NCBI GenBank assembly: GCA_965644265.1
Contig: OZ286469.1
Span: 39,804,001-39,868,000, forward strand
Direction of reading: 5' to 3'
Length of the DNA: 64,000 nucleotides
From: Glycera tridactyla
Taxonomy: Eukaryota
Shown: positions 86-64,000 of the stretch, in pieces
Numbering within the stretch: the stretch's first letter is position 1
Layout: each line of letters begins with the position of its first letter
Notes under the pieces: generated by a model
The model's database searches: none
Told to the model about the DNA's origin: nothing
What the model saw: only the letters and a program-made list of their open reading frames with translations
Translations under genes and position numbers: made by a program

Positions 86-502
86 GTAATGACGGACACA
101 TTGGATGTGAACGAGGGTGGGCCTGCAGGGCTAGTGGAGATTGTCGCTACATTCTCTCCGGAGTATCTCTGTATGAACCGTACAGCCGCAGATGCTCCCG
201 AAGTGTGCGAGTTCGCCGTGTGGGGTGTGATCGAAGCGCTGGACGACGACTACGAGTGTTACGACAGCGGGGTGAAGGTGCCGCAGGCGGTGCTGGGCTA
301 CATCAGCGACTACCCGGTGGAGGACCGCAGAACGTGCGGTCTCCGCGTCCACAAGGACAACTGGCTGGATACGCTCTACATCCCCGTACATGCCGTTACT
401 GATCTACTCTCGGATGGCGATCAGATGCGCAGTCTGCGTATACATCATCAGCTGCAGTACTCCTCCTCACCTGTCTTCACTGAGGAACTGGCGAACATCG
501 AT
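86..502 (+). CDS. Exon A1, pre-VWD beta-sandwich
   Basis: 417 nt, phase 0-0; VMTDTLDVNEGG...ANID. Confidence 0.88.
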
Positions 503-1879
503 GTAAGTTGATCAGCAAAAGCAATCCTTTAGAAACCCCAGATGTCAGTCCCACACTTGTGGACAAGCGGCTTGCGGCATTTGATATTTCTTGATTATTT
601 CTCATACAATTGAACTTCAATGAACATATTTCCATGATGAGCATGGATACATACACTACAACAATAAAAGCATGATGACTAGGTTAGTGGTTTATCTGTG
701 AGAGACCCACGGGTAAGAGAATCAAAGGTACTTGAGGGTTGCTATAGATAATTCTCAACCTGGATATGATTCAAGATATCATCAATGACATTATAGTCTG
801 AAGGTGAACTTTTGTCAACCATCCAGGTTCAACACTTAAATGTGCAGGGGTATACGAATAACCTGGAGCTCTGATTTTCCCCATAGCAAGATATGACGTC
901 TCATTGTAGCCACTTTTTTTTTATTGCAGCTGACTATTCACAATGTCGAGAGTGATGTGATTTGTTCTGCTACTGGGGATCCTCACTACGTCACATATGA
1001 CAAACTGTAAGTTACAAAATTGCTTAGTCACAAACTGATGATTATCTGCTTACTTTCGGCTGAAATTATGTCCATAGGAGACTTGGAAACACCAGTTGTT
1101 AACCACCCCGCATACTGGAGGACTGATAACCAACATAAAGACCAGAGAAAGGATGTAGGCAATATCAATATCACTTTATGAAGTCTATTGCGCAGATGAA
1201 ATGTAGAAAACACTCATTTTCATTATAGCAAATAAAACCGAATCCAACATGATGATTAAATTGTGATTCGGGAATAGCTTCCTGTCAACTTTATTTAGGT
1301 GGCAGGGTTGCAGTTACGTCTTGCTGCAAATTATCTCGGCGGTAGATTTCACCACCATCATAATTCTCAACTTGTTTGTTTGCAGTGGATTCGATAATTA
1401 CAACGAGGGCGAGTTCATCCTGTACCGTCATAAGACCCTGCCATATGAGGTGACTTGACTGATTTATACTGCCATTCTTCTGTCGCGTACTGTGGAAATG
1501 ATTGCTTGAGTGTCGCAATCATGCGAGTTCTGGTTGCATGACATTTGACTGCTTTGTCCATTGCATTGAGTGACCTGAATACTATCGACGGGGAATACGA
1601 GTGTGTGTTGATGACATGTCTTAAGGGACACGGTTGAATGACTGGGTAGTTTCCGATGTTCACGTTTCCAGTTCACGTGCTTGAGATGCATCGAAGATCA
1701 GATGCTTCCATCAGGGAATAGTGCAAGTGAAAAGATTCATCATAATGATGGCACTGATATGGCAGCCATGGATTGTCAGTGTGATCTTCACACACAGAGA
1801 TGGTGGTGCTGATGCCCATAGTGGTGATGCTTGTCGTGGTGGCGGTGCTGCTTCTACTGCTGCTGCTGCCTGCTGATGC

Positions 1880-1921
<42 letters not shown>

Positions 1922-7900: not shown

Positions 7901-10789
7901 TTTATCTGTAAAATAATGTGTGGACTGTAGATGCTAGAAGCTGCAATCCTCTCCAGAATATGGTGTTCACCCTGCTTCACTTCTCCTAATCATGATGGAC
8001 CTGCCTTGATCAAGATGTTCCCCCATCGCGTGCCTACCAGTCGGGGATATTATCAATCAAACACAGAGCTTTTCAGCTACAACCCAACGGCACCACTTAT
8101 TAGGATTCATACCTGTCATTTCATTGTTTCATATTGCCTTATTTCACAAAAATCTCCAAATACACTTCTTTCAAAAATGGAGTCCAAAATGGTAGCATGA
8201 GAGAAGAGTAAGAATGTACACTGCTGGGTAACTCCACAATCGTGTGTGTCCAGACTTTTTAATCGTATCGACCAATCCTTTTGAGGTCTTAAGGGTTGCC
8301 ATCTTACAATATCTCGGAAATCCAACCTGAAACCTGTAGCCTGTAGACAATTGTCCCTGACACTTTTCCCCGACCTAGCAATCACTCATTCGCTAGAATG
8401 GTGCCTGGTGTAATGTTTGAATGTTTGATTGTTCTCTTCAGATGAACCTGTGCTCTACTTGCCATTGACTCGATGTGCCATGGATCTGGACTTCTCCATC
8501 TTTGAGCAGGCGACTACATTCCTGGGAGATGTCACATACATCCCAGCACCAAGTGATCTCATCTATGAAGCAGCCCACTTTGACATGGACACATCCCCTC
8601 TCCACGTCTCATCATCAACAGATCTTGACTCATCCGTGACAATCAGTTTCCTCATGAATGTCTATGCAGAGAGCAATGGCACAATCTTCAACTATGGAGA
8701 AGCAAGTGGTGTTGGATTGAGCATCGTCACAAGTGATGCTGGTATGGTTTGCCTCAAGATGCAGATGGTTGCTAGGGATGATGACAGCATCGTTGGTACA
8801 TACGTCCATGACAACTTCCCACTGGAGCAGTGGGTGTATGTTGCCGGCACTTACGACATGACATCGGGACAGATGAGTCTGTATGTGGATGCAGTGTTCA
8901 GTGGCAGCTATACATTCAACCCAGCAATCCAGCTGAAGACCCAAGAGGATATCTATGTTGGTGGTATTGAAGATGAATCATTCACAGGTGGACTGCACTG
9001 TGTACAGGTCTATGATCGAGTCCTTTCATCTGCCGAGATCTCCACCCTAGCCACCTGCCCATATGGTAAGTTGATTATGTTTCTATTCAGCCTGATTAAG
9101 CCTCCAAACATCAGTGTCATAATCGGTACACTTCATGTGGAAGTTTATCATCACGATGTGACGTGCTCATCGCTTAAATCATCCGGTGATATTGTTATAG
9201 GGTTGGTATCATTCCTTTGGGCGTAATAATCTCTTTAGATGGAGGAAAATTGAGTAGCACTGGATACTCACATTGTTGCCAATCATATCGATCTTGTTCT
9301 AGTGGTCCTCATTTCACTCCACATTGCAGATTGGGTGGATGGTCATCAGTTTGGGTGCTACACATACTGTTTTCCTCTCTGGTGATTTGAAATGATTAGG
9401 AATAACAGAAAATATCGTTTCTCTCTTCTTGCAGGAGTAGTGATGAATGTAGGCCAAAAAGGTGAGTACACCAAGAGTCTTACCCTGGGTTTCTGAAATC
9501 TAATGAATTTCTGAAATGAAAAATCTCTCTCTTTTCTGATAATCTGATGATAGTCAGCCTGATGTGCTCTACTGCATCATCATCATTATTGTCCTGGGGC
9601 CATTGCCATTGTCACCACTACGACAGTTGAGAGGACGTCGAATGCCCTATTCTCGTGGTCAAAGTAGTCGAATGTCCCACGGTAGCCGGTATGTTGCTGA
9701 AAGGTCATACGAAAACTCACAAATCAAATCAACTTGATATCAGTTCGTCACCTTCATCATCACAGATATATTCATTGTTGCGTTCATAATTGTCAATATC
9801 AAAGGTCTTAAGTTGTGGTCCGGCTTGAAAACGAAATATATTACACCCACCGTCTTACCTGTTTTGGCACCACTGATATTATCAAATGAACATCAACACC
9901 TCAACTTTTCTCTCTGTTTGCAGTTTATCCCATCATTTCGTCACTGCCTGTGATATCTCTTGAGGTTGTTGAAGCCACCAATGTCACTGAGAAGACATGG
10001 CAGCTGAGCTGCTCAAGTGCTACTATAGATGATGGAGAAATTCAGTATACCACCACCTGGTATGTGAATGATGACATCATCTCCAGCGATATGACTGTAA
10101 TCACTGGCCTGGGGGAAGCAAGCACCTACAGCTACTTGACAGCACAGATGCTTGAGGAAGCTAACATCACCTACATTGAGCAGGTAGGAAGAAAAGTTCA
10201 ATCAGATTATTCTGCAAGAATGAATGATCGTGTGGATGTATGACTGGATAGATTGGAGGGTGAGGGGAGATTGATGGATAAAACGATGGAAAGTTGGACA
10301 TATGGGTGGATAGATTGATAATTGGATTGACAGACACGTGGGCACACAAACTCACAGATGACAGAATATACAAACCATTGAAGTCCTGCCCTATTGTGAT
10401 GGATGCTCAGTTGCTTGGTTGTTCTTCATCTTGCTATATTGAGTTGCTGCTGCAAAGGTTATAGGGAGGATCATCCACGATCACTCTTTTTTTCGATCAA
10501 GTATTTGGATTTTGTTCAAAATATGATAATTTATTCGTATGTAATGTTGTAGGTGACATGTGAAGTCAGCAGTTGCTATGCTGATGACTGTAGCAAGGAG
10601 TGCTCCCTGACAAGCCTACCCTACCTACCTACTGTTGTTGTAAGTACAATGCCTTTTATAGCCATGCCATTGTAATAGTATAATTCTATTTCAGTATGAT
10701 ATGCTTAGAGAAGTATCAACCATTTCACATTCAGCAAAGAGACTCCAGTTCGGCACGGGCTCAAACATATACTTGGCAACTCACACCAT

Positions 10790-10822
<33 letters not shown>

Positions 10823-27009: not shown

Positions 27010-27072
<63 letters not shown>

Positions 27073-27310
27073 ATACCAGATAGATCATTGTACTCTCCAA
27101 TATCATCTCATCTCATCCTTATCTTCCATTTCACCTGTATTGTCCTGTTTGTCCACCCTGTAAATGTCTTGCCTCAGTTTTGTCCGTGTAATCTTTCTTT
27201 TTTCGTATCCTATCGTTTACCTGGAAATGTGTACCTTTATTACCTAGTGTATTGAATGTATGCAATTGCTGTAACGATGTTAAATAAAGTTTGAAAATCA
27301 AATCAAAATC

Positions 27311-27374
<64 letters not shown>

Positions 27375-43727: not shown

Positions 43728-43766
<39 letters not shown>

Positions 43767-55700: not shown

Positions 55701-58700
55701 TCCATGTATGAATCTCCCCTTGCAGACCAGCCTGTGTTGTATCTGCCACTCACCTCCTGTGCAGCTGATATTGACTTCTCCATCTTCGAACAAGTGACCT
55801 CTTCGGATGAACTCACCTATATGGATGCACCAAATGACATGATGGGTGGTGCTGCAGTGTTCGCTGCTTCAGAGATGAGGTCTCTTACTGTCACCAGTTC
55901 TGCCACCCTGGATACTTCCACTTCAATCACTATTCTTGCCCATATTTATGTTGAGGGTAATGGAACTATCCTCAACTATGGAACGGATGCGGGTGTGGGC
56001 TTGGCAGTGAAGACCAATGCTGATGGCACCATGGTGCTTCAGTTCAACACCATCCATGTCGCAGATGACTTTTTCCAGGCTACAGTGGAGTACAGCAACT
56101 TACCTCTTCAACAGTGGCTGTATGTTGCAGCAGTGTATGACTACAACACTGGTGTCGTGAGTGTGTCAGTGGACGGAGTGGCAGGAGAAAGTTATACTTA
56201 TAATCCTATCATTCTGCTACGCACACAGCATGATCTCCACCTAGGTGGTATTGAAGCAGACTGGTTCTCAGGATCTCTGTCATGTGTCAGGATATACAAC
56301 CGACCACTATCAACTGCAGAGATCAGTGATTGGGCCATCTGCCCTCTTGGTAAGCTTCATGTATCTTTCATAGTATCTTTCACTGAATTTAGAATCTGTC
56401 TCAATCAGTATTTGCTCGTTAAAGTTGATGTATTGTGTATTGATTTTTATTTGTATGATCCATTTCTTAAGGGGTAATCCCCTGACAAAGTTGACTTGAA
56501 GCTAGTGTTTGCCAGCTCTCTGTAATGAAACTGGAATTGCCAAGGATTTCGAACTTTTTTCAAAAAGAATACTTTATAAAGATCCGTTTACCTAACTTTG
56601 TTCATCAGACTGAACTTCTCGCATATTTATAAGTTTGAAAACCATAGGCATGAATATCTCCTATAGTTAATCTGAACTGAGAATCTGATTAACTTGAACA
56701 CAGCCATATTGACAATATCATCTTCAGTGTATAAAGTATTTTGCTTATTTTTTGTGGGGAACATATCTCCCTTTTCGGCATTGATAGGCAAATACAAACT
56801 TTTCGCTGATGCTTCATCATTCCATCTGATACGCTCTCTTGCAGGTCTGCCAGATGGTCCAGGGCGTGATAGAGGTGAGTTGAATATGAGTCATAACAAT
56901 TTAAAATTTGATCTATAACTAATTCTTATCCAACTACCTATCCAGCCACTCGGTCATCCAGTGATATAACCATCCATCTGCCGACTCTTCAAGTCCATCC
57001 ATTCTTTCATTCACACATCCCTCCAGCCATTCACCTATCAATCTATCCATCCATCCATCCATCTATTCATCCATCCATGACAAAGCACATCAGTTCAAAC
57101 ATTTTATCCTATCACATATTCAATGAGATCCCCTGCTACGCCCAATATATAGGTGTCACATTTTTGCACCATTTTGATGTTGCAACCTTAACTTTGTACA
57201 TCCGACAGGTGATACCTTGCAATCTCTGATATACCATGTGTATTGAAATACTTTTGAAAACTTTTGTAATTTACCTTCCCGAACCTTGCTTTCAGTATAT
57301 CCCATGGTGGATGCAGTTCCCACCGTAACACTGGAAATCATTGATGTGGAAAATTCAACTGATATGTCATGGCAGCTGAGATGCGCCAGTCCAACTGTGG
57401 ACGATGGCATGATTATGTATGAAGCCACCTGGTATGTGGCAGGATATGCATTTACAGAGTCCTTCTCTTATAATGGGACCGAAGTGGCTCAAGTGACCAG
57501 CTACCTCACCCCAGGAATGCTGGATTTGAACAACATTACCTACATCCCAGAGGTAAGTTCTCAACAAGTATTGGCTCATTGTTAAACACAGTCATGGAAT
57601 TTTCAACTGCAGTCTCATGGGTTCGAAGAATACAATGTAATGTGGTGAGTATACTTCAACCCTTGAGACTTCAACCTCAAGTCGCTTGTTTCAGCCTGGG
57701 ACTTTGACTTTCTTACCATCTCAATCCCTTTATAGTTGTAGTAATCACTAGATAGAAAATCATCTTGACCCCGAAGCCTGAGTCAGCTTGGGGATTTTTT
57801 GTGTGTATGGTGGTGTTTCCCTCTATGATGAAGAACATATTGGAATATTTAAAAAGATTAATGTGAATTTCCTTCATGGTAGGCGTTCAGCTAGTGAAGA
57901 TCATACAGTACAAAGCGATCAGTCAATCATGACAAGTACATTTAATTGCAGATCGTGTGCGAGGTGAGCACATGTTATGCTGATGACTGTGCTGTTATGT
58001 GCCCCCTGCAGAGTGAGCCGTACATACCCTCTGTTCAGGTTAGTAACGACTATTGACATGCCTTTCTGAAATAGCTTTCTCTTGTGGATGACAACTATAA
58101 TGTTGATGATATTCAGATCACTCTCATCATAAATTATTTCTGTGACATTCTAACCAGAACTTGGGACTTGGTCGCAATCTTGAATACAGTCCATCCATAT
58201 GCATTTGTTGCTTGCGTACAACATGCAAAGTGGAGCCAAGATAGTGGTCTCTTCAACTCGAAAGCTATCCATGATACTTTTTATTAGAGAATATCCTATT
58301 ATGCATGTTGGACCAGAATTGTTGCATAACATACAATCTATTTCAAGGAAAACGCATGCAAATATCTAGAACATAGTCTAGCATGACAAAAAGGAAATCA
58401 GATACGGAATAGTGTGAATGTGGTCGGAATGGTGTATGGGTGCATGATGAGAATGATGATGTTGTATTGTTCTACGAAGTGTTATTCTTTATTTGCTCCA
58501 TCAGGTGACAACAGTTGGTCCGCTGACAACTACAGAAGGTGGGGAGCCTGCATACGTGGAAATACACACTTCTCTATCTCCAGAGTACTTCTGTATGAAT
58601 AGAACCTTGGAAGATGGTCGCACTGTCTGTGAGATTTCCGTCTGGGCCTACATTGAACTCACTGATGATGAGCTCAAGTGTTACGACACCGGTGTCCCTG

Positions 58701-61700
58701 TATCACAGGCAGTCGTTGGTTGGATTACTGACTACCCAGATGATGTCCGCGAGGACTGTGGCATCCGCATTACCATCACTAACTGGATGCAGACACTCCG
58801 CATCCCCATCTATGCCATGATTGATGGAGTTGTGGATGGCACACAAACACGTACTACACACGTCCATCATCAAGTGGAATATTTCAACACCCACGTCTTT
58901 GATATGGAACTCACTAGCATTGATGTAAGAATATTGTGGGCATGTGTGGTAGCAAGTTCATTATTCGGACACGTACACTATTCTTTGGAAATGACACAGA
59001 AGAAAAAGGCTTGTGACTGCGATTGTGGTTCTGATTGTGCTGTATGGCAATGATGTTGGAAGCAGTCAACATAGAGATGGGAGCAATATATCTTCCAGGG
59101 GGAGGGGAGAGAGAAAAGAGTCCCTCGACCTGTGTGTGCAGTCAGGGCCACCACTCACAATATCATGTCAGACTCAAACAGTAGAGGGCGTTCTACCATG
59201 TTAGAAAAAAAGAGTATCTTGTACGAAAGAATCCAGGTTAATCAATATATGGATTGAAGTGAGCTTCTGCTCATTCAGTACATCTGTCATATAAGCTGAA
59301 AGCTGAAAAACATTCCAAAACTGACTGGGTTTTTTGAAATTCATGGCCGTCTTCTGGTTACGCTATCAATTTCTGTACCGCATAGATTGTGGTACATCCA
59401 CAAGTAGACAACTTCTTTTATTTGAGGTTGATTCTATCAGACTCACATGTTTACCTCAGCAAAGCCTGCTGATATTCATGCAGGACCTGGTGAAAATTAT
59501 AATGATGTACTTTCCAATGTAGCAAGTGGATAATTGCTGTATTTGTGATGATGAAGAAGTAGGTGTGATGATGAGTGTTCTTGTTTGATAAATTGTGGTG
59601 AGTACTAAATTTGCTCAACATTGCTTCTCACTTGTTTTTCAGTTGAACATCGAGGATGTGAACAACGATGTGGAGTGTCATGCTACAGGAGACCCACACT
59701 ACATCACTTATGATAAGTAGTAAGTATTCGCCAGTACGTATGATAAACTTGATAGAGTGTCTCGTGGACGTCCTCGAGTTCCTATTTGGATTGCAAGTTT
59801 ACTTGATGGGCAAAAGAAAGTTGGGTACAGGATACAGGATTGAATTGGTTTCCAGACTAAATCATAATGATATACCTGATGTCCTTGAATATTGGAACCA
59901 TAATTGTCAGGGGCAAATAATGTAATGGAGAAATGATGATATTTAGCTCATATTATGGGACAATTGGAACGGAACAAATGAAGACTATCTATTCAACTTT
60001 TGACAAGGGAGATCCATATCAGGATGTTCTTCTTGTGGTGTACGAGCTAGTAATGTGTATGAAATACCTGGTAGTAGAGAGCGTGATTTTCTTATCCTTT
60101 TACGCTCGTCTCCTGAAACACATTGTGGACAGGTTTGATTCAATGTACTATTTTCTTTTGCTTTCAGTGAGTTCGACAATTACTTCGAGGGAGAGTTTAT
60201 ACTCTATAGACACACATCACTGCCATACGAGGTATGTCTCAGGAGAATTCCAAACTCATTTTGCTCCGATCTGTTTGTTGCAATCAGTATCATAATCAAC
60301 AATAATCATCATGATGAGAAATACCCCATCATAACAGCAATACCAATGCAAGTGAATATCAAATCATTTGAAATGACCAAGTTCATGATTCTTCACATAT
60401 GCGATCAAAGCGCAGCAGTTTATCGTCGTTAACCTCACTAGGGAAAACCTCCAAAGGTCGAGAGGGGTGTTTATAGAATCAGTTATTAAGATGCAGCTTA
60501 TCCATATTGATTGCCATTGTGATACGAGTGCTGATACACACATTAAGGGATCATCAATCATATCCACCTATATTCTTTGTTTTTCAGGCACGCACATTCC
60601 TGCAGAAGTGCTATAACACAGTGGCCTGTACGTGTGCAGTAGCTGCTCGCTCTGGGGATGATGTCATCCTCTTTGATACCTGCAACAATGGTGGCACCAT
60701 TGCTGTCAAGATCTATGCACATGGTGACCTCACTGCTGGAACACAGCTCCTACAATATAATGGTGGATCCAAGTACCAGGTGAGCATCCTATCAAAAGAA
60801 TTATCATCATTGCACATATTCTAGAGGGTGACATCTCATATAGGATGTGTATCCGTTGTTGCTTCAAAATGATATTGATAGAAATAATGCTGATGAAAGT
60901 CATATCCATGATAATGATCATGATAAAGACAATAATCTTACCAACAGTGAGAATAGTATTGATTGAACATTATCATCTTTTTTGATATCATCTTTCTCAT
61001 TATCTACTCTAGATCACCACAACTACTTCGATATCAATTTATCCGATCATTGCCATTATCATCGTGATCTTTATTAGTATGACTTTTGTCATTGTTATCA
61101 TCACTATACATAATATAATTTTCATCACTTCACTTTTTATGTGCCTCAACTGACTCTCACTATATTGTAATTGCTCTATTTCTCTGCACTAGGTTGTCTA
61201 TCCAAGTGGTGGAATATTGACAGTAGAATGGGGCTTTGATATCTACATGAATGTGTACTTCCAACCATCAGCTATGGACTATGGGAATACAGAGGGTCTA
61301 TGTGGTACTTATGATGGAGTGGCAGAGAATGAGTACACCGCCAGTGATGGCAACATCGATCCAACGACTGATCGTCATCCAGATACATTCATCCTCAGCT
61401 GGAGGTAGGTGATATACTATGAGTAATCGACTCTAGTCCAAGTGGGAGTGATGTGAGAGACTGGGCGGTGTTTTCGATAATGGTCTTGCAACTCATACAT
61501 CACAATGGCCCATGCCAAACTTTGGTTACCTCGTGCTTAGTAGGAGCAGATTGTGGCTGATATTTTCCCTGTGCATTGCTGCCAAATTTCTGGGGTACTC
61601 TATGGTGTATGTGGACGAAGATGATTACTGGTTGTTGATGAGTTTGGTTGATTGGTTCCTTGTTTCTAATGGCATTGGCGCAACCCCGGCTATTTTGATA

Positions 61701-63743
61701 TACTCATGCAATGGGCATAAGTTGGATCATCCAGTATTCCTCGTGAATGAAGAAAGCATGCTGAAGATTTACAAGATCAACAGACACAATTCAGTTGTTT
61801 AGCATGAGTCATCTGGAGATTTCCTGCTAGGCATCCAGGAACTTTGCTAGAATTACATATCATAAATTGCTGAGACATGACATTATGATCACGATATTCT
61901 ATGTTACAGAGTGGAAGATCCTGATCTGTCCATTTATAATGGTTACTGTGGTGATGGAGCTGGCAGTATGACTTTCGACGGAGAGTACTGTGACTGCCAG
62001 TGGATGGGTTCGGCCAACTGTGGTGGAGCCTTCAATCTCGTCCAGTGCTCGCTCTCGACCATCACTGCTGGTGCACTCGATGTCACTGAATCCTTCTTTG
62101 CCATGGCTATCACTCCTGATGAATGCGATGATGAAATATTCGAAGCTGATCTCAACTTTGCTCCTGTAAGTATCGAAAAGTAATATTTATGTATTGTGTA
62201 TGATTGACAGTCTGTATCCATAATTTACAATGTACACTGACGGAGCTAAATAAAGAAAGATAGATACATACAAGTTTCAACCAGTGGGTTGATCAATTCT
62301 ATCATTAGGGTATTGAAGTTTACAAGAATTTATTCACATAGCAGCTGAATAGGAATAATTCATAGTGCTGCGTGACTTCAAGAATATTTTGTTTCAGTTG
62401 TATCATGTTTGTCTGCTTCATCCAGGATGGTGAAATCAATGGTGTCGTGACAGAGGTAGAGGCTGTGGAAGCATGTACGACCATGATCCAGGCATCAGCA
62501 ACAGTTACAGCTTGCTCTGCAACAATCACACTAGACATTGAGGCTCAAATCTCAAGCTGTGCTATTGACTACCAGGTAAGATATATGGATTGATCATCAT
62601 TGCCATTATCACACCCATAATCCTGTTCATGACATCATTCTCTATTTTACTTGAGAGAATGAACAGTGATGAAAAATTGCAGATTATTTTTAATAGTTCC
62701 ATCTTGTGTGAGGGTGGTCTGGAGCCAAGAGCCTGTCGTGATCACATGTTTTTGTATAGATATATGTGCATTTCAACTAATCTGGGGCAAGATTTTGGCC
62801 TTGCTTCTCTTTCACAAGCCAATCATATCCTGCTCATTCCCACAGAAAATTGTTCTTAGCCTTTTTCTGGCCCAACGCCTGACTATCCTATCAGGACGAT
62901 CCTATATGTCCAGTGACATGTCTATGTCTCGTGAAGGATCTATTCAGTCTTCTCAGCCAAATTCTCCGTTGTTTTTCAAATTGATAGTATCGCTGATGTG
63001 GAGACAGATTTTCTAAGAGAAATGATATGTGGTGAATTGAAATACTATGTGGCTGAATTCGATTAAGACCAGGAGGAGTACCTTACAACAATCATATGAC
63101 TAATTGTATTGTATTGCTGTGTTTCTGACAGGCTTCTGGCATACTGGACTGGGCTGAGGCTGCTATCAATGCTCTAACTCGACAATGTCTGCGATCACTG
63201 GCGACAGACACCAATCATTGGGTGGCAGATGATGATGGAAATGTGGGGCCGCCGAATGACATCACAGAACAACTATGTGACAATGACTGCAGTGGGCATG
63301 GTACATGCACAGGTAAGTCTCACTAATTTACATCATCCAATTGCTGCACTTCATAATAACATAACCCTCACGTTTTGTATGATTATGATTGCTGTTGATG
63401 GCACATACTTCTTGCTATCTATTATCATGTTAATGATGAGTGATTTATTGATTGATTGATTGACCAATTGTTTGTTTGATTGATTGAATGATTGATGATA
63501 GTGGTGGCTGTGATGGATCTGCAGTTAGTGGTGGTTGTGATACTTCTTGCTATCTGTTATGATGTTAATGATGATTGATTGATTGATCGACTGATAGATT
63601 GATTGATTGATTGATTGATCAATTGATTGGTGATAGTGGTAGCCATGGTGGACCGGCATTTACTGGTGAATGTGAGGCCAGTTGCAATGGGAGTGACATT
63701 AGAGGTGGTGTTGATGCTGGTGTTGCTGGTGATGCTGGTGATG

Positions 63744-63814
<71 letters not shown>

Positions 63815-64000
63815 CACTGATAATTTTTGCAGGTGGTACATGCATCTGTGATGATGGTTGGATGCTGGGAGACTGTAGTCAAGAAACAAGTACTCCTCCA
63901 ACCATCCCTGCTACTCCTCAGCACGTCACATGTGATGAATCATGTGACTCAGTTGTAATCAATGGCAATAACTTCGCTAACCTGGCCACTCTCACCTGTC
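86..64000 (+). CDS. Giant multi-exon VWDE-like (von Willebrand factor D and EGF domain) repeat protein with LamG spacers; partial at both ends; 86 exons, about 5,690 aa in window
   Basis: 86 exons with canonical AG/GT ends join in frame; I saw no stop codon. 15 exon classes recur 6 times with conserved lengths and phases. Motifs: TGDPHY, GLCGT(F/Y)DG (VWD); CDNDCS(G/A)HGxCxxGxCxCDxGWML(G/A)DCS (EGF); LamG-like exon. Confidence 0.9.
930..1006 (+). CDS. Exon B1, VWD start with GDPH
   Basis: 77 nt, phase 0-2; LTIHNVESDVICSATGDPHYVTYDK. Confidence 0.9.
1386..1449 (+). CDS. Exon C1, VWD
   Basis: 64 nt, phase 2-0; GFDNYNEGEFILYRHKTLPYE. Confidence 0.9.
1855..1935. repeat. Compound (GCT)n(GAT)n microsatellite
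   Basis: Direct reading. Confidence 0.9.
2032..2223 (+). CDS. Exon D1, VWD
   Basis: 192 nt, phase 0-0; VRTFLKNCNGAAACNCAVAVRSGDDVI...GYQ. Confidence 0.9.
2636..2847 (+). CDS. Exon E1, VWD end
   Basis: 212 nt, phase 0-2; IFFPSG...GLCGTFDG...LSW. Confidence 0.9.
3219..3474 (+). CDS. Exon F1, Cys-rich post-VWD
   Basis: 256 nt, phase 2-0; VEDPDLSIFSGYCGD...DLDYVP. Confidence 0.9.
4101..4244 (+). CDS. Exon G1, C8-like region
   Basis: 144 nt, phase 0-0; DTTTFVDEETARAEC...CTFDYM. Confidence 0.88.
4926..5106 (+). CDS. Exon H1, C8-like region and EGF start
   Basis: 181 nt, phase 0-1; ATGLIEW...CDNDCSGHGDCV. Confidence 0.9.
5606..5790 (+). CDS. Exon I1, EGF end and IPT-like start
   Basis: 185 nt, phase 1-0; GTCQCDDGWMLGDCS...RFTFIT. 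Confidence 0.9.
6690..6803 (+). repeat. Three-copy 40-41 bp minisatellite
   Basis: CACTATAGGGCA....GACCTACA at 6693, 6733, 6774. Confidence 0.85.
6829..7050 (+). CDS. Exon J1, IPT/TIG-like
   Basis: 222 nt, phase 0-0; VTEVSW...QVKCPLP...ANDGVTFS...IQRK. Confidence 0.88.
7055..7550. repeat. Degenerate (CAT/CGT/CAC)n low-complexity tract
   Basis: Direct reading; source of spurious poly-D/poly-V ORFs. Confidence 0.85.
7591..7702 (+). CDS. Exon K1, Cys-rich motif
   Basis: 112 nt, phase 0-1; SDSCIIGGVCYGDRDRNP...WTID. Confidence 0.88.
8442..9065 (+). CDS. Exon L1, LamG/concanavalin A-like domain
   Basis: 624 nt, phase 1-1; EPVLYLPL...WVYVAGTYD...CVQVYDRVLS...CPY. Confidence 0.9.
9435..9461 (+). 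CDS. Micro-exon M1, linker
   Basis: 27 nt, phase 1-1; pyrimidine tract plus AG, GTGAGT donor; VVMNVGQK. Confidence 0.75.
9924..10183 (+). CDS. Exon N1, Ig-like
   Basis: 260 nt, phase 1-0; YPIISSLPVISLEV...WQLSC...YIEQ. Confidence 0.88.
10553..10639 (+). CDS. Exon O1, Cys-rich
   Basis: 87 nt, phase 0-0; VTCEVSSCYADDCSKECPLTSLPYLPTVV. Confidence 0.88.
10790..10838. repeat. (GA)n microsatellite
   Basis: Direct reading. Confidence 0.95.
11063..11476 (+). CDS. Exon A2
   Basis: 414 nt; VTTEGPLTVTEGG...KTFD. Confidence 0.88.
11959..12035 (+). CDS. Exon B2 (GDPH)
   Basis: 77 nt; VNVNDANNDYECHSTGDPHYLTYDK. Confidence 0.9.
12307..12370 (+). CDS. Exon C2
   Basis: 64 nt; EFDNYYEGEFILYKHTTLPYE. Confidence 0.9.
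13021..13212 (+). CDS. Exon D2
   Basis: 192 nt; ARQFTRACFANVACNC...TKYQ. Confidence 0.9.
13485..13590. repeat. (GT)n/(GTAT)n microsatellite
   Basis: Direct reading. Confidence 0.9.
13628..13839 (+). CDS. Exon E2
   Basis: 212 nt; VVYPTG...GLCGTFDG...LSW. Confidence 0.9.
14579..14837 (+). CDS. Exon F2
   Basis: 259 nt; VEDPDASIYNGYCGD...DLDLVP. Confidence 0.9.
15092..15238 (+). CDS. Exon G2
   Basis: 147 nt; DTSVPSVDEDQARAEC...CTIDYM. Confidence 0.88.
15967..16147 (+). CDS. Exon H2
   Basis: 181 nt; ASGVIEW...CDNDCSGHGTCV. Confidence 0.9.
16561..16739 (+). CDS. Exon I2
   Basis: 179 nt; GTCQCDEGWMLADCS...FTTIT. Confidence 0.9.
17276..17497 (+). CDS. Exon J2
   Basis: 222 nt; VTETTW...CYTCNCLDNTCTQN. 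Confidence 0.88.
18056..18167 (+). CDS. Exon K2
   Basis: 112 nt; ADSCVIDGVCYEAGDQNP...WSQL. Confidence 0.88.
18563..18801 (+). CDS. Exon L2a, LamG part 1
   Basis: 239 nt, phase 1-0; DQPVVFLPLDQC...RITVQ. Confidence 0.85.
19163..19295 (+). CDS. Exon L2b, LamG part 2
   Basis: 133 nt, phase 0-1; GNGTILVWG...KDDNSIR; aligns to (G/S)NGTI(F/L) of other L exons. Confidence 0.82.
20061..20236. mobile_element. Tc1/mariner-type MITE (176 bp)
   Basis: TA|CAGTCGAACCTCC ... GGAGGTTCGACTG|TA: 13-bp perfect TIR, about 26-bp imperfect TIR, TA flanks, internal GGTGGTCTTTATAG subrepeats. Confidence 0.85.
20338..20595 (+). CDS. Exon L2c, LamG part 3
   Basis: 258 nt, phase 1-1; AVSYNNIAM...IAATYD...CLRMFDR...TCPL. 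Confidence 0.85.
20862..20888 (+). CDS. Micro-exon M2
   Basis: 27 nt; PDFNIGIR; GTGAGT donor. Confidence 0.75.
21348..21616 (+). CDS. Exon N2
   Basis: 269 nt; YPIVPARPTIALEI...TFISS. Confidence 0.85.
22310..22396 (+). CDS. Exon O2
   Basis: 87 nt; IECEVTTCYADDCEYTCPLMSEPYIPHVT. Confidence 0.88.
22838..23257 (+). CDS. Exon A3
   Basis: 420 nt; VLTESLTVIEGG...KSLE. Confidence 0.88.
24150..24226 (+). CDS. Exon B3 (GDPH)
   Basis: 77 nt; VLVQDLNNDVECHSTGDPHYITFDK. Confidence 0.9.
24618..24681 (+). CDS. Exon C3
   Basis: 64 nt; EFDNYFEGEFILYRHDTLPYE. Confidence 0.9.
25233..25424 (+). CDS. Exon D3
   Basis: 192 nt; ARTYLKSCYNAVACIC...TKYQ. Confidence 0.9.
25642..25859 (+). CDS. Exon E3
   Basis: 218 nt (2-codon insertion); IVLPSG...GLCGTFDG...LSW. 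Confidence 0.9.
26352..26607 (+). CDS. Exon F3
   Basis: 256 nt; VEDPAESIYNGYCGD...DLDFVP. Confidence 0.9.
27010..27072. repeat. (CAT)n microsatellite
   Basis: Direct reading. Confidence 0.95.
27315..27374. repeat. (CAT)n microsatellite
   Basis: Direct reading. Confidence 0.95.
27466..27612 (+). CDS. Exon G3
   Basis: 147 nt; APIDSDITEEDARAAC...CAIDYM. Confidence 0.86.
28186..28366 (+). CDS. Exon H3
   Basis: 181 nt; ASGVLVW...CDNDCSAHGTCV. Confidence 0.9.
29051..29229 (+). CDS. Exon I3
   Basis: 179 nt; GTCQCDEGWMLADCS...FTLIT. Confidence 0.9.
30070..30288 (+). CDS. Exon J3
   Basis: 219 nt; VTEVSW...CYVCDFINPICERT; acceptor context atypical (GGCGGATAG). Confidence 0.83.
30836..30947 (+). 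CDS. Exon K3
   Basis: 112 nt; DDTCLIDGVCYDADVANP...WSMS. Confidence 0.88.
31190..31385 (+). mobile_element. SINE-like 3' portion with (AAAC)n tail
   Basis: CACGTAAAAGAACC core, GGACGTTAAAC end (31342) shared with the 43715 element, AAAC tail; 5' boundary uncertain. Confidence 0.45.
31463..32089 (+). CDS. Exon L3, LamG-like
   Basis: 627 nt, uninterrupted; MWPVLYLPL...ICPL. Confidence 0.9.
32452..32478 (+). CDS. Micro-exon M3
   Basis: 27 nt; IDDEIGVP; GTGAGT donor. Confidence 0.75.
32878..33131 (+). CDS. Exon N3
   Basis: 254 nt; YPVVTSLPTVNLEV...SIEQ. Confidence 0.88.
33599..33688 (+). CDS. Exon O3
   Basis: 90 nt using the GTAAGT donor (an in-frame alternative GT at 33683 is possible); VTCEVSVCYADNC... 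Confidence 0.8.
34238..34684 (+). CDS. Exon A4 (about 9-codon insertion)
   Basis: 447 nt; LTTDALTVVEGG...GSVE. Confidence 0.88.
35213..35289 (+). CDS. Exon B4 (GDPH)
   Basis: 77 nt; VTIQDVYNDVECHATGDPHYITYDK. Confidence 0.9.
35573..35636 (+). CDS. Exon C4
   Basis: 64 nt; EFDNYFEGEFILYRNKLFPYE. Confidence 0.9.
35808..35979 (+). mobile_element. tRNA-derived SINE with target-site duplication
   Basis: A-box-like TGGTGTTTCAGTGGTAG, B box GGTTCAATCCC, (CATTTC)n tail; flanked by CCTCTATTTGAG at 35796-35807 and 35980-35991. Confidence 0.8.
36157..36348 (+). CDS. Exon D4
   Basis: 192 nt; ARTFLRKCYNTVACTC...TKYQ. Confidence 0.9.
36749..36960 (+). CDS. Exon E4
   Basis: 212 nt; VVFPSG...GLCGTYDG...LSW. 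Confidence 0.9.
37343..37601 (+). CDS. Exon F4
   Basis: 259 nt; VEDAALSIYSGYCGD...DLDFVP. Confidence 0.9.
38015..38290 (+). promoter_or_regulatory. Putative retroelement promoter / 5' leader
   Basis: CpG-rich. TATAAATA about 38016; TGACGTCA at 38032 and 38118; ATTGG at 38070, 38156, 38230; GGTCACATGACTCA at 38169 and 38245; TGACCTAATTCCGG at 38092 and 38271. Confidence 0.5.
38325..39776 (+). CDS. DIRS-like Gag/ORF1 (483 aa, intact)
   Basis: ATG at 38325 (AAACATGG). S/K-rich disordered N-terminus, heptad helix, acidic tract, core PGNC..P...NEE...DLRL...R...LKP...LFG..L, RGG-rich and Q/Y/P-rich tail. Confidence 0.75.
   Translation: MADNGDDMPSLEPQVMSGKKHTRSQNSAASIASTPERTNTKAISPDPTTSGSEKSTKSRPKHDNTSAHHASTSKSGENVPTTKSSSKDSSKSKGKSSDMSALTAAIQQLTNRFDNVDKEIVSLKDSNDKLTKLYTDSQATTSAPPKPAKKRQRVVSISSSDDPASEEGECSDDDEEDDDSGDYFDWDDEEEDTAPDDGDLLDEMVDELNSMYKLVAKKGPDIDDKLFKTLKEMFVSPLSDKDVDTILIKYKAPGNCGFMFDPEITNEEMLKNVPPQVRKIDLRLCRVQLYILKSMISQIELLNDARADKGAFAKKAATSIKNNLALSATEYQEICFQRKYILKPYINADYHSLMKRTDDYSPVTQEHLFGSKLNERIDAINAAKALAYKVGYKPKSRGYSGKHYGPKQSGSGSGSGKPFLGKGRGGYGENRGGRGRGRGRGQGKQTRRSNQYQHQYHNQYQQPHYPNQYYQMPPPLPPAPPRM
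39777..40809 (+). pseudogene. DIRS-like reverse transcriptase, frameshifted
   Basis: Frame 1 FVAASLPEFLPYWHLITKD...KLIEQGVI; the KKDG...(R)MIINL motif is broken by indels near 40045-40076; frame 2 carries YLDD at 40383-40394. Confidence 0.8.
40810..40978 (-). pseudogene. Inverted RNase H N-terminal fragment of the same element
   Basis: Minus strand reads EEAILDVQWWIENAHICPKP...IWTDASEEGWGAAIY...GKWDLVE, the direct continuation of the + strand RT. Confidence 0.85.
41473..41619 (+). CDS. Exon G4
   Basis: 147 nt; DNTVPVVDEETAHAEC...CTIDYM. Confidence 0.88.
41680..41829. mobile_element. Palindromic MITE-like element
   Basis: 31-bp imperfect inverted repeats GGACAAGTTCGGCT..TGACAATTGTAGCA at 41680-41710 and 41799-41829; interior rich in ACAATTGT/ATTGTCG palindromes. 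Confidence 0.65.
42289..42469 (+). CDS. Exon H4
   Basis: 181 nt; ASGIIDW...CDNDCSAHGTCQ. Confidence 0.9.
42494..42560 (-). mobile_element. Retroposon tail remnant with (AATC)n on minus strand
   Basis: Minus strand reads GCCGTTAAACGCC-AATCAATC..., the same end motif as the 31342 and 43715 copies. Confidence 0.45.
42803..42981 (+). CDS. Exon I4
   Basis: 179 nt; GTCICDEGWMLGDCS...FISIT. Confidence 0.9.
43706..43766 (+). mobile_element. 5'-truncated retroposon 3' end with (AATC)n tail
   Basis: GGACGTTAAAC plus (AATC)n, flanked by direct repeat TGCTATGAGATG at 43694-43705 and 43767-43778. Confidence 0.75.
43838..44056 (+). CDS. Exon J4
   Basis: 219 nt; VTTSTW...CYECDYMDNTCQQK. Confidence 0.88.
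44510..44621 (+). CDS. Exon K4
   Basis: 112 nt; VGKCMIDGVCYDDGDKNP...WTIL. Confidence 0.88.
45174..45797 (+). CDS. Exon L4, LamG-like
   Basis: 624 nt, uninterrupted; EPVLYLPL...NCPL. Confidence 0.9.
46222..46251 (+). CDS. Micro-exon M4
   Basis: 30 nt; LPDGPGRDR; GTGAGT donor. Confidence 0.8.
46381..46637 (+). CDS. Exon N4
   Basis: 257 nt; YPMVDAVPMVTLEI...YISE. Confidence 0.88.
47143..47229 (+). CDS. Exon O4
   Basis: 87 nt; IVCEVSSCYADDCAVICPLKSEPYIPSVQ. Confidence 0.88.
47639..48058 (+). CDS. Exon A5
   Basis: 420 nt; VTTVGPLTITEGG...GSID. Confidence 0.88.
48776..48852 (+). CDS. Exon B5 (GDPH)
   Basis: 77 nt; LNIEDVNNDVECHATGDPHYITYDK. Confidence 0.9.
49276..49339 (+). CDS. Exon C5
   Basis: 64 nt; QFDNYFEGEFILYRHTSLPYE. 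Confidence 0.9.
49676..49867 (+). CDS. Exon D5
   Basis: 192 nt; ARTFLQKCYNTVACTC...SKYQ. Confidence 0.9.
50050..50079 (+). other. Decoy duplicate of the first 30 nt of exon E5 with its own AG acceptor
   Basis: Identical to 50140-50169, preceded by TCTTTCTCTTCACCAG; in-frame TGA follows at 50089-50091. Confidence 0.9.
50140..50351 (+). CDS. Exon E5
   Basis: 212 nt; VVYPSG...LSW; a decoy acceptor and exon-start copy lies at 50050. Confidence 0.88.
50916..51171 (+). CDS. Exon F5
   Basis: 256 nt; VEDPEQSIYNGYCGD...DLDFAP. Confidence 0.9.
51839..51988 (+). CDS. Exon G5
   Basis: 150 nt; SGDINGVVTEEEAVEAC...CAIDYQ. Confidence 0.88.
52703..52883 (+). CDS. Exon H5
   Basis: 181 nt; ASGILDW...CDNDCSGHGTCT. 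Confidence 0.9.
53468..53652 (+). CDS. Exon I5
   Basis: 185 nt; GTCICDEGWMLGDCS...FTTIT. Confidence 0.9.
53967..54188 (+). CDS. Exon J5
   Basis: 222 nt; VTTTSW...CLMCDYEDGTCMPA. Confidence 0.88.
55089..55200 (+). CDS. Exon K5
   Basis: 112 nt; VGVCLIDGVCYNDGDRNP...WTID. Confidence 0.88.
55726..56349 (+). CDS. Exon L5, LamG-like
   Basis: 624 nt, uninterrupted; QPVLYLPL...ICPL. Confidence 0.9.
56845..56874 (+). CDS. Micro-exon M5
   Basis: 30 nt; LPDGPGRDR, same peptide as M4. Confidence 0.8.
57296..57552 (+). CDS. Exon N5
   Basis: 257 nt; YPMVDAVPTVTLEI...YIPE. Confidence 0.88.
57952..58038 (+). CDS. Exon O5
   Basis: 87 nt; IVCEVSTCYADDCAVMCPLQSEPYIPSVQ. Confidence 0.88.
58505..58924 (+). 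CDS. Exon A6
   Basis: 420 nt; VTTVGPLTTTEGG...TSID. Confidence 0.88.
59643..59719 (+). CDS. Exon B6 (GDPH)
   Basis: 77 nt; LNIEDVNNDVECHATGDPHYITYDK. Confidence 0.9.
60168..60231 (+). CDS. Exon C6
   Basis: 64 nt; EFDNYFEGEFILYRHTSLPYE. Confidence 0.9.
60588..60779 (+). CDS. Exon D6
   Basis: 192 nt; same peptide as D5. Confidence 0.9.
61193..61404 (+). CDS. Exon E6
   Basis: 212 nt; same peptide as E5. Confidence 0.9.
61910..62165 (+). CDS. Exon F6
   Basis: 256 nt; VEDPDLSIYNGYCGD...DLNFAP. Confidence 0.9.
62426..62575 (+). CDS. Exon G6
   Basis: 150 nt; DGEINGVVTEVEAVEAC...CAIDYQ. Confidence 0.88.
63132..63312 (+). CDS. Exon H6
   Basis: 181 nt; ASGILDW...CDNDCSGHGTCT. Confidence 0.9.
63746..63814. 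repeat. (GAT)n microsatellite
   Basis: Direct reading; ends 18 nt upstream of exon I6. Confidence 0.95.
63833..64000 (+). CDS. Exon I6 (runs off window)
   Basis: GTCICDDGWMLGDCSQETSTPP... Confidence 0.9.

What the first reader, a model, noticed from the sequence alone, without database searches (positions are those of the whole stretch)
86..64000. Giant 'poly-VWDE' protein: at least six tandem ~1,020-aa VWD-EGF-IPT-LamG modules in one ORF
Seen: 86 exons join in frame to about 5,690 aa with no start, stop or signal-peptide exon between modules. Apart from the DIRS-bearing intron, every intron is under about 1.1 kb, leaving little room for separate genes. Known: VWDE-type proteins usually carry a single VWD core followed by EGF repeats; multi-VWD proteins (VWF, gel mucins, FCGBP, tectorin, zonadhesin) repeat smaller VWD-C8-TIL units. 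Inference: here a whole VWDE-like core plus a LamG/ConA domain has been polymerised as a kilo-residue cassette, giving a very large extracellular bead-on-string scaffold. I do not recognise this architecture as described.
Basis: partly seen in the sequence, partly recalled or inferred. Interest (0 to 1): 0.82.

Follow-up and report, generated by a model that had tools for sequence, protein, structure and literature searches.

The report
Giant gene of repeated VWD-LamG modules
This 64-kb stretch of a probable annelid genome is an inner slice of one very large gene that strings together at least six copies of a 1,015-residue multi-domain unit (a VWD domain with a self-cleavage motif, an EGF and a lectin-like LamG domain among others); I found this arrangement in no database or paper, but no RNA data exist and its function is untested.

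Summary
I rebuilt the gene model independently. It has 81 plus-strand exons, all GT-AG, joining to 16,930 nt (5,643 codons) with no stop. They form five complete modules (1,011-1,019 aa) and the first 573 aa of a sixth.

Each module has 14 exon types (A-N), with splice positions and phases conserved across all copies. The join from the last exon of one module to the first exon of the next is phase 0/0 in all five cases. Those introns are 409-549 nt, ordinary for this gene. They hold no conserved start codon or signal peptide, and four of five have no poly(A) signal. A contig from a related animal keeps the same last-exon/first-exon adjacency and splice sites.

All modules are under purifying selection (dN/dS 0.08-0.21), and 42 cysteine columns are invariant. 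Pfam confirms VWD and Laminin_G_3, and every module keeps GDPH. The EGF is visible but below Pfam threshold; IPT, VWDE kinship and DIRS identity were not confirmed.

A profile search of 1.84 billion proteins found no protein combining this LamG with a VWD module. No RNA runs were listed, so "one transcript" remains inferred. The same scan noted that the array continues past the window end.

Verdict: real, and a new variant of the multi-VWD giant extracellular proteins.

The parts
86..10639 (+). Module 1: 14 exons (A-N), 1,011 aa. It starts at an AG acceptor, so the gene begins upstream of the window.
11063..22396 (+). Module 2: 16 exons, 1,015 aa. The LamG exon is split into 18563-18801, 19163-19295 and 20338-20595.
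22838..33688 (+). Module 3: 14 exons, 1,012 aa.
34238..47229 (+). Module 4: 14 exons, 1,019 aa. Its F/G intron (37602-41472) carries a retroelement fragment.
47639..58038 (+). Module 5: 14 exons, 1,013 aa.
58505..64000 (+). Module 6, partial: exons A to I, 573 aa. It runs off the window end and is 94% aa identical to module 5.
10640..11062 (+). Inter-module intron 1>2, 423 nt, GTAAGT...AAG, phase 0/0.
22397..22837 (+). Inter-module intron 2>3, 441 nt, GTAAGT...CAG, phase 0/0.
33689..34237 (+). Inter-module intron 3>4, 549 nt, GTAAGT...CAG, phase 0/0.
47230..47638 (+). Inter-module intron 4>5, 409 nt, GTTAGT...CAG, phase 0/0.
58039..58504 (+). Inter-module intron 5>6, 466 nt, GTTAGT...CAG, phase 0/0.
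975..986 (+). GDPH codons of module 1, in exon B at the start of the VWD domain. The same motif lies at 12004-12015, 24195-24206, 35258-35269, 48821-48832 and 59688-59699.
50140..50351 (+). Exon E of module 5: C-terminal third of the VWD domain (GLCG motif). Homologous exons are 2636-2847, 13628-13839, 25642-25859, 36749-36960 and 61193-61404.
55726..56349 (+). Exon L of module 5: a complete Laminin_G_3 / ConA-like domain in one exon. Homologous exons are 8442-9065, 31463-32089 and 45174-45797.
52703..53652 (+). Exons H and I of module 5. The single six-Cys EGF of the module is split by the phase-1 H/I intron.
38274..40835 (+). Retroelement fragment inside the F/G intron of module 4: a 490-500 aa coiled-coil ORF followed by an ORF with RVT_1. 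It is not part of the gene product.

Best explanation
The window is an internal slice of one very large plus-strand gene of a probable annelid.

Shown from sequence: the coding part is a head-to-tail array of a repeat unit of about 3,040 nt (14 exons, about 1,015 aa). Each unit is spliced in frame (phase 0/0) to the next.

Shown or partly shown for each unit, in order:
- a 140-aa four-Cys domain of unknown fold;
- a VWD domain whose first strand carries C-x3-GDPH;
- a Cys-rich region of about 190 aa;
- one EGF;
- a beta-rich stretch (IPT-like by eye only);
- a short Cys-rich linker;
- a ConA-like Laminin_G_3 domain;
- a probable Ig-like domain with a small Cys-rich tail.

Inferred: the product is a huge, very acidic, disulfide-rich extracellular protein, more than 5,600 aa in this window alone. 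According to an untested note of this scan, it is about twice that length and membrane-anchored.

Inferred by analogy with FCGBP: each VWD cuts its own Asp-Pro bond at GDPH during secretion. The cysteine four residues before the motif would keep the pieces disulfide-linked, so the mature protein would be a nicked but continuous chain. The repeated lectin-like LamG domains and other modules would give many binding sites along a long scaffold, as in a mucus, cuticle, tube or cell-surface coat.
For: One frame, no stops: 81 exons, 5,643 codons, 80/80 GT and 80/80 AG.

Conserved gene structure: the splice position and phase of every exon type are conserved in all copies, and exon borders are crisp.

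Inter-module junctions: all five are phase 0/0 with GTAAGT or GTTAGT donors and pyrimidine-rich acceptors (YAG in four, AAG in one). Their introns (409-549 nt) match the gene's median of about 520 nt. They have no conserved ATG or signal peptide; modules 3 and 6 have no ATG that reads into exon A. AATAAA or ATTAAA occurs in only one of five.

Second organism: metagenome contig L003 has an 87-nt N-type exon (AG...GTGAGA, phase 0) 680 nt upstream of an A-type exon with a CAG acceptor. Fragment P0153 is 78% identical to exon A of module 4 but at most 52% to the other modules, so individual modules have orthologues.

Selection: dN/dS is 0.08-0.21, with 42 invariant Cys columns and 324 invariant columns in all.

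Recent duplication: the latest copy is offset from the module frame (K4-N4 plus A5-J5 against K5-N5 plus A6-I6 at 83-97% nt identity). That is what unequal exchange inside a single repeat gene would give.

Domains: VWD; Laminin_G_3 with an AlphaFold pLDDT of 95 and a ConA-like fold; GDPH in all six modules.

Literature: the D and H of GDPH are required for autocleavage (PMC10880436). FCGBP is secreted with all its GDPH sites cleaved and held together by disulfides (PMC8267560).

Composition: no membrane-like segment and no furin-type site; D+E is 15.3% against K+R 3.2%.
Against: - No RNA evidence of any kind: no RNA run could be listed, and the protein libraries hold only exon-sized genomic fragments.
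- Neither end of the gene is in the window, so signal peptide, membrane anchor and total module number are unseen.
- In-frame compatibility is inherited by duplication, so the five junctions are not five independent tests.
- Introns before modules 2, 4 and 5 contain an in-frame ATG that reads into exon A. The one before module 5 is followed by a hydrophobic stretch, though this is not conserved.
- GDPH cleavage, disulfide tethering, ligand binding and location are all inferred by analogy.
Confidence: 0.72

Rival explanations
1. It is one gene, but the modules are optional cassettes. Every module starts and ends in phase 0, so whole modules could be skipped or chosen. Transcripts would then carry variable subsets rather than all modules at once.
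For: All module boundaries are phase 0/0, so any module can be left out without breaking the frame. Other notes of this scan report many alternative-exon arrays in this genome (these are untested leads). Modules are old, individually conserved and distinct (48-74% aa identity, with module-specific orthologues). That fits modules that are not interchangeable.
Against: Nothing marks the modules as mutually exclusive: I saw no competing RNA structures, no incompatible splice-site types and no docking-type conserved intron elements. The inter-module introns evolve like the other introns (71-82% identity in the recent duplicate). Skipping 14 exons at a time has no known precedent.
Confidence: 0.15
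2. It is a tandem array of separate paralogous genes, each encoding one secreted protein of about 1,015 aa. Their short first and last exons would have been missed.
For: Tandem gene arrays are common. In-frame ATGs read into exon A before modules 2, 4 and 5, and the one before module 5 is followed by a hydrophobic stretch. If the exon N donor is not used, exon N runs into a stop after 5-53 further codons.
Against: The exon N donor and exon A acceptor are canonical and conserved in every copy and in a second organism. The spacers are only 409-549 nt and would have to hold a 3' UTR, poly(A) site, promoter, 5' UTR and signal-peptide exon. Four of five have no AATAAA or ATTAAA. Modules 3 and 6 have a stop within 2-15 codons upstream of exon A with no ATG. 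No candidate leader is conserved between copies. The spacer diverges like a neutral intron.
Confidence: 0.08
3. It is a non-functional relic or an assembly artefact: a dead repeat array, or a collapsed or expanded mis-assembly of fewer modules.
For: Modules 5 and 6 are 94% aa identical, and repeats are hard to assemble. No expression data exist.
Against: There is not a single stop or frameshift in 5,643 codons, and all 160 splice dinucleotides are intact. dN/dS is 0.08 even for the youngest pair, with dS 0.34, so these are distinct, selected copies rather than duplicated reads. The other modules differ by 26-52% in protein sequence and have barely alignable introns.
Confidence: 0.03

Closest known systems
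FCGBP (IgGFc-binding protein) and the gel-forming mucin / VWF / zonadhesin / tectorin group of multi-VWD proteins
   Same: It is a giant, cysteine-rich extracellular-type protein built by tandem repetition of a unit that contains a VWD domain. As in FCGBP, every repeat here keeps the GDPH autocleavage motif, with a cysteine four residues upstream. In FCGBP all such sites are cleaved and the pieces stay disulfide-linked (PMC8267560; the D and H are required, PMC10880436). Exon E matches the VWD domains of VWF D3, MUC2, MUC5AC and FCGBP in the PDB.
   Different: The repeat unit here is about 1,015 aa with at least six different domains, including a ConA-like LamG, an EGF and an unknown 140-aa head. 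In those proteins the unit is a VWD-C8-TIL(-E) assembly of about 400 aa. No C8 or TIL was detected in the post-VWD exons. I saw no mucin-like Pro/Thr/Ser region and no CK knot in the window.
[quoted passage not shown]
   Same: It combines a VWD domain with EGF of the teneurin-like kind. The sub-threshold EGF_Teneurin hits lie exactly across the H/I exon junction. VWDE is described as one VWD plus several EGF-like domains (PMC7390686, PMC9117669).
   Different: Here there are many VWDs, one EGF per unit, and a LamG domain in every unit. VWDE has one VWD followed by an EGF array and no LamG. Sequence kinship to VWDE could not be tested with the tools allowed.
MUC4 / SUSD2 type (NIDO-AMOP-VWD with GDPH)
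   Same: A GDPH-bearing VWD sits outside a C8-TIL context, preceded by another extracellular domain and followed by EGF.
   Different: Exon A gives no NIDO or AMOP hit. Those proteins have a single VWD, not a repeated super-module.
Other giant one-gene module arrays noted in this same genome (FN2, PAN/Apple and EB-repeat genes)
   Same: They are very long genes made by internal duplication of extracellular modules with symmetric phases (untested notes).
   Different: Those repeat one small domain per exon. Here the repeated unit is a 14-exon composite of about 11 kb.

Membership tests
VWD domain (Pfam PF00094) | Profile match above the curated cut-off | tested here: met
   Exon E of module 5 scores 31.7 bits against a cut-off of 22.9, matching profile positions 112-155 of 156. 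A profile of the six E exons hits VWF D3, MUC2, MUC5AC, MUC5B and FCGBP in the PDB, down to E = 3.9e-9. The N-terminal two thirds lie on exons B-D and give no hit on their own.
VWD domain (Pfam PF00094) | Canonical first-strand motif C-x3-G-D-P-H-Y-x-T-[FY]-D and the GLCG motif | tested here: met
   Both are present in all six modules (alignment; coordinates).
Self-cleaving GDPH VWD (FCGBP/MUC2/SUSD2 type) | Intact G-D-P-H with the Asp and His needed for Asp-Pro cleavage | tested here: met
   GDPH is intact in 6 of 6 modules. The requirement comes from PMC10880436.
Self-cleaving GDPH VWD (FCGBP/MUC2/SUSD2 type) | Actual cleavage of the Asp-Pro bond, with the pieces held together by disulfides | not testable with these tools
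   This needs protein chemistry (reducing against non-reducing gels, N-terminal peptides).
Mucin/FCGBP-type D assembly | VWD followed by C8 and TIL domains | tested here: not met
   Exons F, G and H of module 5 give no C8 or TIL hit even at E up to 5. Caveat: the exons were scanned one at a time, because a spliced sequence could not be submitted.
VWDE family | A single VWD followed by an array of EGF-like domains | tested here: not met
   The window has at least six VWDs, each followed by only one EGF. The VWDE architecture is taken from PMC7390686 and PMC9117669.
VWDE family | Sequence orthology to vertebrate VWDE outside the VWD and EGF domains | not testable with these tools
   No VWDE reference sequence could be fetched. 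Searches with exon-sized queries see only proteins of 0.55-1.75 times the query length.
Laminin_G_3 / ConA-like lectin-glucanase superfamily (PF13385) | Profile match above the cut-off and a jelly-roll fold | tested here: met
   Four modules score 58.6-63.4 bits against a cut-off of 27.6. The AlphaFold model has pLDDT 95 and pTM 0.92. Foldseek hits are ConA-like jelly rolls with TM 0.66-0.76 at 9-16% identity.
EGF-like domain | Six-Cys pattern and a profile match | tested here: inconclusive
   The pattern C-x3-C-x5-C-x4-C-x-C-x8-C is visible in every module across the H/I junction. Pfam EGF_Teneurin and hEGF hits on the two halves are below threshold, at 12-15 bits against cut-offs of 24-29.
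IPT/TIG domain | Profile match | tested here: inconclusive
   Exon J and the end of exon I give no Pfam hit at E up to 5. The domain would be split between two exons. The label rests only on the look of the sequence.
DIRS retroelement (the insert in the long intron) | Reverse transcriptase plus a tyrosine recombinase and DIRS-type terminal repeats | tested here: inconclusive
   RVT_1 scores 77.7 bits, and the RT resembles eukaryotic retroelement RTs. No recombinase ORF and no terminal repeats were found. Only a 35-nt perfect inverted repeat lies at the end of the RT ORF.

The most novel reading that the evidence does not exclude
The gene encodes a self-nicking 'polyprotein-like' scaffold with no described counterpart. 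It would be a precursor of more than 10,000 residues, with about eleven or more super-modules of about 1,015 aa and a membrane anchor (per scan note s1-349733). It would cut itself at every GDPH. The resulting pieces of about 1,015 aa would each span the C-terminal 85% of one genomic module and the head of the next. They would be held in register only by VWD disulfides. Individually conserved, non-interchangeable modules would present a fixed series of lectin-like LamG sites. The Asp generated at each cut might also cross-link covalently to matrix partners, as has been proposed for MUC2 (from my own knowledge, not checked here). That would make the protein a programmable cross-linker of worm mucus, cuticle or tube.
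Probability: 0.3. Interest if true: 0.72.

Novelty: new variant of a known kind. Interest (0 to 1): 0.56.

Why it matters
Multi-VWD giants such as VWF, the gel-forming mucins and FCGBP are the main builders of animal mucus and clots. All of them repeat the same small VWD-C8-TIL unit. This gene shows a second way to build such a protein. A whole six-domain composite of about 1,015 aa, carrying its own GDPH self-cleavage site and a lectin-like LamG, has been multiplied in frame, and each copy has then been kept distinct over long evolutionary time.

If it is expressed as predicted, it would be among the largest animal extracellular proteins. It would also be a natural test bed for three questions: what GDPH cleavage does in a repeat context, how very large repeat units (11 kb, 14 exons) duplicate and stay in frame, and what annelid surface coats are made of.

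It is also a practical warning for annotation. Public protein libraries hold this family only as single-exon fragments.

Tried and rejected
- RNA evidence: the look-up of sequencing runs listed no RNA run, so read laying could not be used.
- Profile search of 1.84 billion representatives with the LamG exon. The 150 best were unrelated multi-LamG_3 proteins (with F5/8C, pentraxin, fn3, kelch and similar domains) plus exon-sized fragments. BLASTP of whole modules against all 150 matched only the LamG part, and none has a VWD.
- Word search with exon A: only three exon-sized fragments, all from one ENA metagenome.
- Two JGI metagenome scans: the first found nothing, the second two distant VWD pieces with no other module exon.
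- AlphaFold on exon A with a 9-sequence alignment gave pLDDT 46, which is unusable. The ESM Atlas feature search for exon A gave only weak Calx-beta/adhesin-like leads with low recognition. A PDB profile search for exon A found nothing meaningful, and one for exon D found nothing.
- Pfam could only be run exon by exon, because spliced sequences may not be typed into tools. Domains split by introns (IPT, EGF, the front of VWD, a possible Ig) therefore stay unconfirmed.
- A 15th conserved exon per module: none found. The apparent conservation beyond exon C is just the translated pyrimidine tract.
- Furin-type sites between modules, as in a polyprotein cut by convertases: none.
- Rfam: no hits.
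- The Foldseek top list is dominated by the lectin-like N-terminal half of clostridial neurotoxin binding domains. I read this as PDB redundancy for a generic ConA-like jelly roll at 9-16% identity, not as kinship to a toxin.

Full report
WHAT IS THERE

The window is eukaryotic DNA of about 42% GC. A self-comparison of all stop-free plus-strand segments shows that almost every long segment has five homologues spaced about 11 kb apart. Protein identity between them is 40-100%. The first exons of the six copies start at 86, 11063, 22838, 34238, 47639 and 58505.

GENE MODEL

For each of 14 exon types (A-N) I aligned the homologous segments. I then looked for the donor and acceptor positions shared by all copies. 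One position and phase stood out clearly for every exon end, and all adjacent phases are compatible. Two corrections were needed:
- The donor of exon N in module 1 is the GTAAGT at 10639/10640.
- The LamG exon of module 2 is split by two extra introns.

The assembled model has 81 exons, 80/80 GT donors and 80/80 AG acceptors. It is 16,930 nt long, which is 5,643 codons, with no stop. The donor consensus is a normal metazoan (A/C)AG|GTAAGT. Acceptors have C or T at position -3 in 79 of 80 cases and 72% pyrimidines upstream. Exon borders are crisp: similarity between copies ends exactly at the splice sites.

Exon coordinates:
- Module 1: 86-502, 930-1006, 1386-1449, 2032-2223, 2636-2847, 3219-3474, 4101-4244, 4926-5106, 5606-5790, 6829-7050, 7591-7702, 8442-9065, 9924-10183, 10553-10639.
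- Module 2: 11063-11476, 11959-12035, 12307-12370, 13021-13212, 13628-13839, 14579-14837, 15092-15238, 15967-16147, 16561-16739, 17276-17497, 18056-18167, 18563-18801, 19163-19295, 20338-20595, 21348-21616, 22310-22396.
- Module 3: 22838-23257, 24150-24226, 24618-24681, 25233-25424, 25642-25859, 26352-26607, 27466-27612, 28186-28366, 29051-29229, 30070-30288, 30836-30947, 31463-32089, 32878-33131, 33599-33688.
- Module 4: 34238-34684, 35213-35289, 35573-35636, 36157-36348, 36749-36960, 37343-37601, 41473-41619, 42289-42469, 42803-42981, 43838-44056, 44510-44621, 45174-45797, 46381-46637, 47143-47229.
- Module 5: 47639-48058, 48776-48852, 49276-49339, 49676-49867, 50140-50351, 50916-51171, 51839-51988, 52703-52883, 53468-53652, 53967-54188, 55089-55200, 55726-56349, 57296-57552, 57952-58038.
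- Module 6 (partial): 58505-58924, 59643-59719, 60168-60231, 60588-60779, 61193-61404, 61910-62165, 62426-62575, 63132-63312, 63833-64000.

Introns are 217-1,042 nt, plus one of 3,871 nt. I found no 15th conserved exon type.

ARE THE COPIES ALIVE?

Protein identity between modules is 48-74%, and 94% for modules 5 and 6. dN/dS is 0.08-0.21, and synonymous sites are saturated between the older copies. Across the five full modules, 324 alignment columns are invariant, 42 of them cysteines, and four N-glycosylation sequons are conserved. These are old, separately maintained coding copies. They are not pseudogenes and not assembly duplicates.

ONE GENE OR MANY?

This is the crux, and no RNA data could be obtained: no run was listed. 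The sequence evidence is as follows.
1. All five N-to-A joins are phase 0/0. Donors are GTAAGT or GTTAGT. Four acceptors are CAG and the one before module 2 is AAG, all with a pyrimidine-rich tract upstream.
2. The spacers are 423, 441, 549, 409 and 466 nt, against a gene-wide intron median of about 520 nt.
3. No ATG-plus-hydrophobic leader is conserved in the spacers. Modules 3 and 6 have a stop 2-15 codons upstream of exon A with no ATG in between. AATAAA or ATTAAA occurs in only one spacer. Module 5 does have an in-frame ATG followed by a hydrophobic stretch. I read that as a translated pyrimidine tract, because module 6 lacks the ATG although its spacer is about 82% identical over the aligned part.
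4. In the recently duplicated pair, the N/A spacer is 82% identical over the aligned part. The other introns are 71-80% and the exons 83-97%. So no conserved promoter-like block stands out.
5. The latest duplication is offset from the module frame. K4-N4 matches K5-N5 at 85-92% nt and A5-I5 matches A6-I6 at 83-97%, while A4-J4 against A5-J5 is only 61-78%, apart from exon E. That is what unequal exchange inside one repeat gene would produce.
6. There is independent comparative support. Exon-sized fragments from one ENA metagenome (ERZ23486739) come from a related animal. Contig L003 carries an 87-nt N-type exon bounded by AG and GTGAGA in phase 0. An A-type exon with a CAG acceptor lies 680 nt downstream, with no poly(A) signal between them. 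Fragment P0153 is 78% identical to exon A of module 4 but at most 52% to any other module. So the array, and the identity of single modules, predate the split of the two animals.

I put about 0.85 on a single transcription unit across the window. Part of that is shared with the possibility that some modules are optional.

DOMAINS

- Exon E is the C-terminal third of a VWD domain (Pfam 31.7 bits against 22.9). A profile of the six E exons hits the VWD domains of VWF, MUC2, MUC5AC, MUC5B and FCGBP in the PDB.
- Exon B carries the canonical start of a VWD, C-x3-GDPH-Y-x-T-[FY]-D, in all six modules.
- Exon L is a complete Laminin_G_3 domain (58.6-63.4 bits). With 21 aligned sequences, AlphaFold gives pLDDT 95. 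Foldseek returns ConA-like jelly rolls with TM 0.66-0.76 at 9-16% identity. The top of the list is the lectin-like half of clostridial neurotoxin binding domains and a carbohydrate-binding domain of an arabinanase. This is a fold-level match only.
- One six-Cys EGF per module straddles the H/I intron and gives only sub-threshold teneurin-type EGF hits.
- Exon A (140 aa, four invariant Cys, a conserved NRT sequon) has no Pfam or PDB match, and its AlphaFold model is poor.
- No C8, TIL, NIDO, AMOP or IPT hit was obtained exon by exon. The IPT-like stretch (exons I/J) and an Ig-like pattern in exons M/N (LRC...W-Y...C-E-V) rest on inspection only.
- The window part of the product has no membrane-like segment and no furin-type site. 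It is strikingly acidic: D+E is 15.3%, K+R 3.2% and Lys 1.0%.

HOW IT PROBABLY WORKS

The domain types and the 4.5% cysteine content point to a secreted or cell-surface protein. By analogy with FCGBP, each module should nick itself at Asp-Pro and remain disulfide-tethered. FCGBP is secreted with all its GDPH sites cleaved and held together by inter-fragment disulfides (PMC8267560). The Asp and His of the motif are required for that cleavage (PMC10880436). The repeated lectin-like LamG domains suggest multivalent glycan or matrix binding along a very long scaffold. All of this is inference and nothing here tests it.

NOVELTY

A profile of the LamG exon was searched against 1.84 billion representative proteins. 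It returned no protein that also matches any other part of the module, and none with a VWD. The only close hits are exon-sized metagenomic fragments. Literature searches for the domain combination found nothing. VWDE is described as one VWD plus several EGF domains (PMC7390686, PMC9117669). FCGBP and the mucins repeat VWD-C8-TIL.

The limits of this negative are real. Exon-sized queries cannot reach full-length relatives in the word-index search. Only the best 150 hits of the profile search are listed. Giant genes are often mis-annotated.

I therefore rate it a new variant of the multi-VWD giant extracellular proteins, not a new kind.

EARLIER NOTES OF THIS SCAN

These are AI notes and I treated them as leads only.
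- The array is said to continue for more than 5,290 aa in the next window and to end in a membrane anchor (s1-349733). I could not check this.
- GDPH in every module (s1-340468, s1-349757): I confirmed this for my window.
- The two extra introns in the LamG exon of module 2 (s1-340481): confirmed.
- Exon homogenisation between modules (s1-349773): consistent with exon E of module 4 being 90% identical to E5 and E6 while its neighbours D and F are 67-71%.

Noticed in passing
window 18563-20595: Only module 2 has its LamG exon split by two extra introns (18802-19162 and 19296-20337). This LamG is also the most divergent copy. It has lost the otherwise invariant Q-W and part of the GG-x-E region, and it is 23-35% identical to the metagenomic relatives, against 29-43% for the other modules.
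   Followed up: yes
window 44510-64000: The youngest duplication is offset from the module frame. Exons K-N of module 4 match K-N of module 5 at 85-92% nt, and A-I of module 5 match A-I of module 6 at 83-97%. So the breakpoint lies in the J/K intron, not at the module boundary.
   Followed up: partly
window 36749-36960 vs 50140-50351 and 61193-61404: Exon E (VWD C-terminal part) of module 4 is 90% nt identical to E5 and E6, while the flanking exons D and F are only 67-71%. This looks like exon-limited gene conversion between modules.
   Followed up: partly
window 37602-41472: The long intron holds a retroelement fragment: a 490-500 aa coiled-coil ORF (about 38274-39776) and an RVT_1 ORF (40077-40835). 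A perfect 35-nt inverted repeat (40775-40809 / 40944-40978) sits at the end of the RT ORF. No recombinase or terminal repeats were seen, so the DIRS label is unproven.
   Followed up: partly
L001, L002, L003 (ENA metagenome ERZ23486739, sample SAMN14350216): One environmental metagenome contains short contigs with orthologous exons of this gene family from a related animal. The exon borders are the same, and one exon is 78% identical to exon A of module 4 specifically.
   Followed up: partly
whole predicted product (window 86-64000): The composition is extremely acidic and lysine-poor: D 9.5%, E 5.8%, K 1.0%, R 2.2%. That gives a net charge of roughly -680 over 5,643 residues. This may bear on cation binding or on the material it forms.
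   Followed up: no
window 7084-7415, 10790-10838, 13486-13590, 27010-27404, 63405-63814: Microsatellites and short tandem arrays sit inside introns: hexamer arrays after exon J of module 1, (AG)24 in the 1>2 inter-module intron, (TG)52, and CAT/ATC/TGA runs. None lies in an exon.
   Followed up: no
window 15469-15789 and 17620-17868: Two intronic stop-free segments in module 2 (G/H and J/K introns) resemble each other (56% over 41 aa). This is probably a small dispersed repeat.
   Followed up: no
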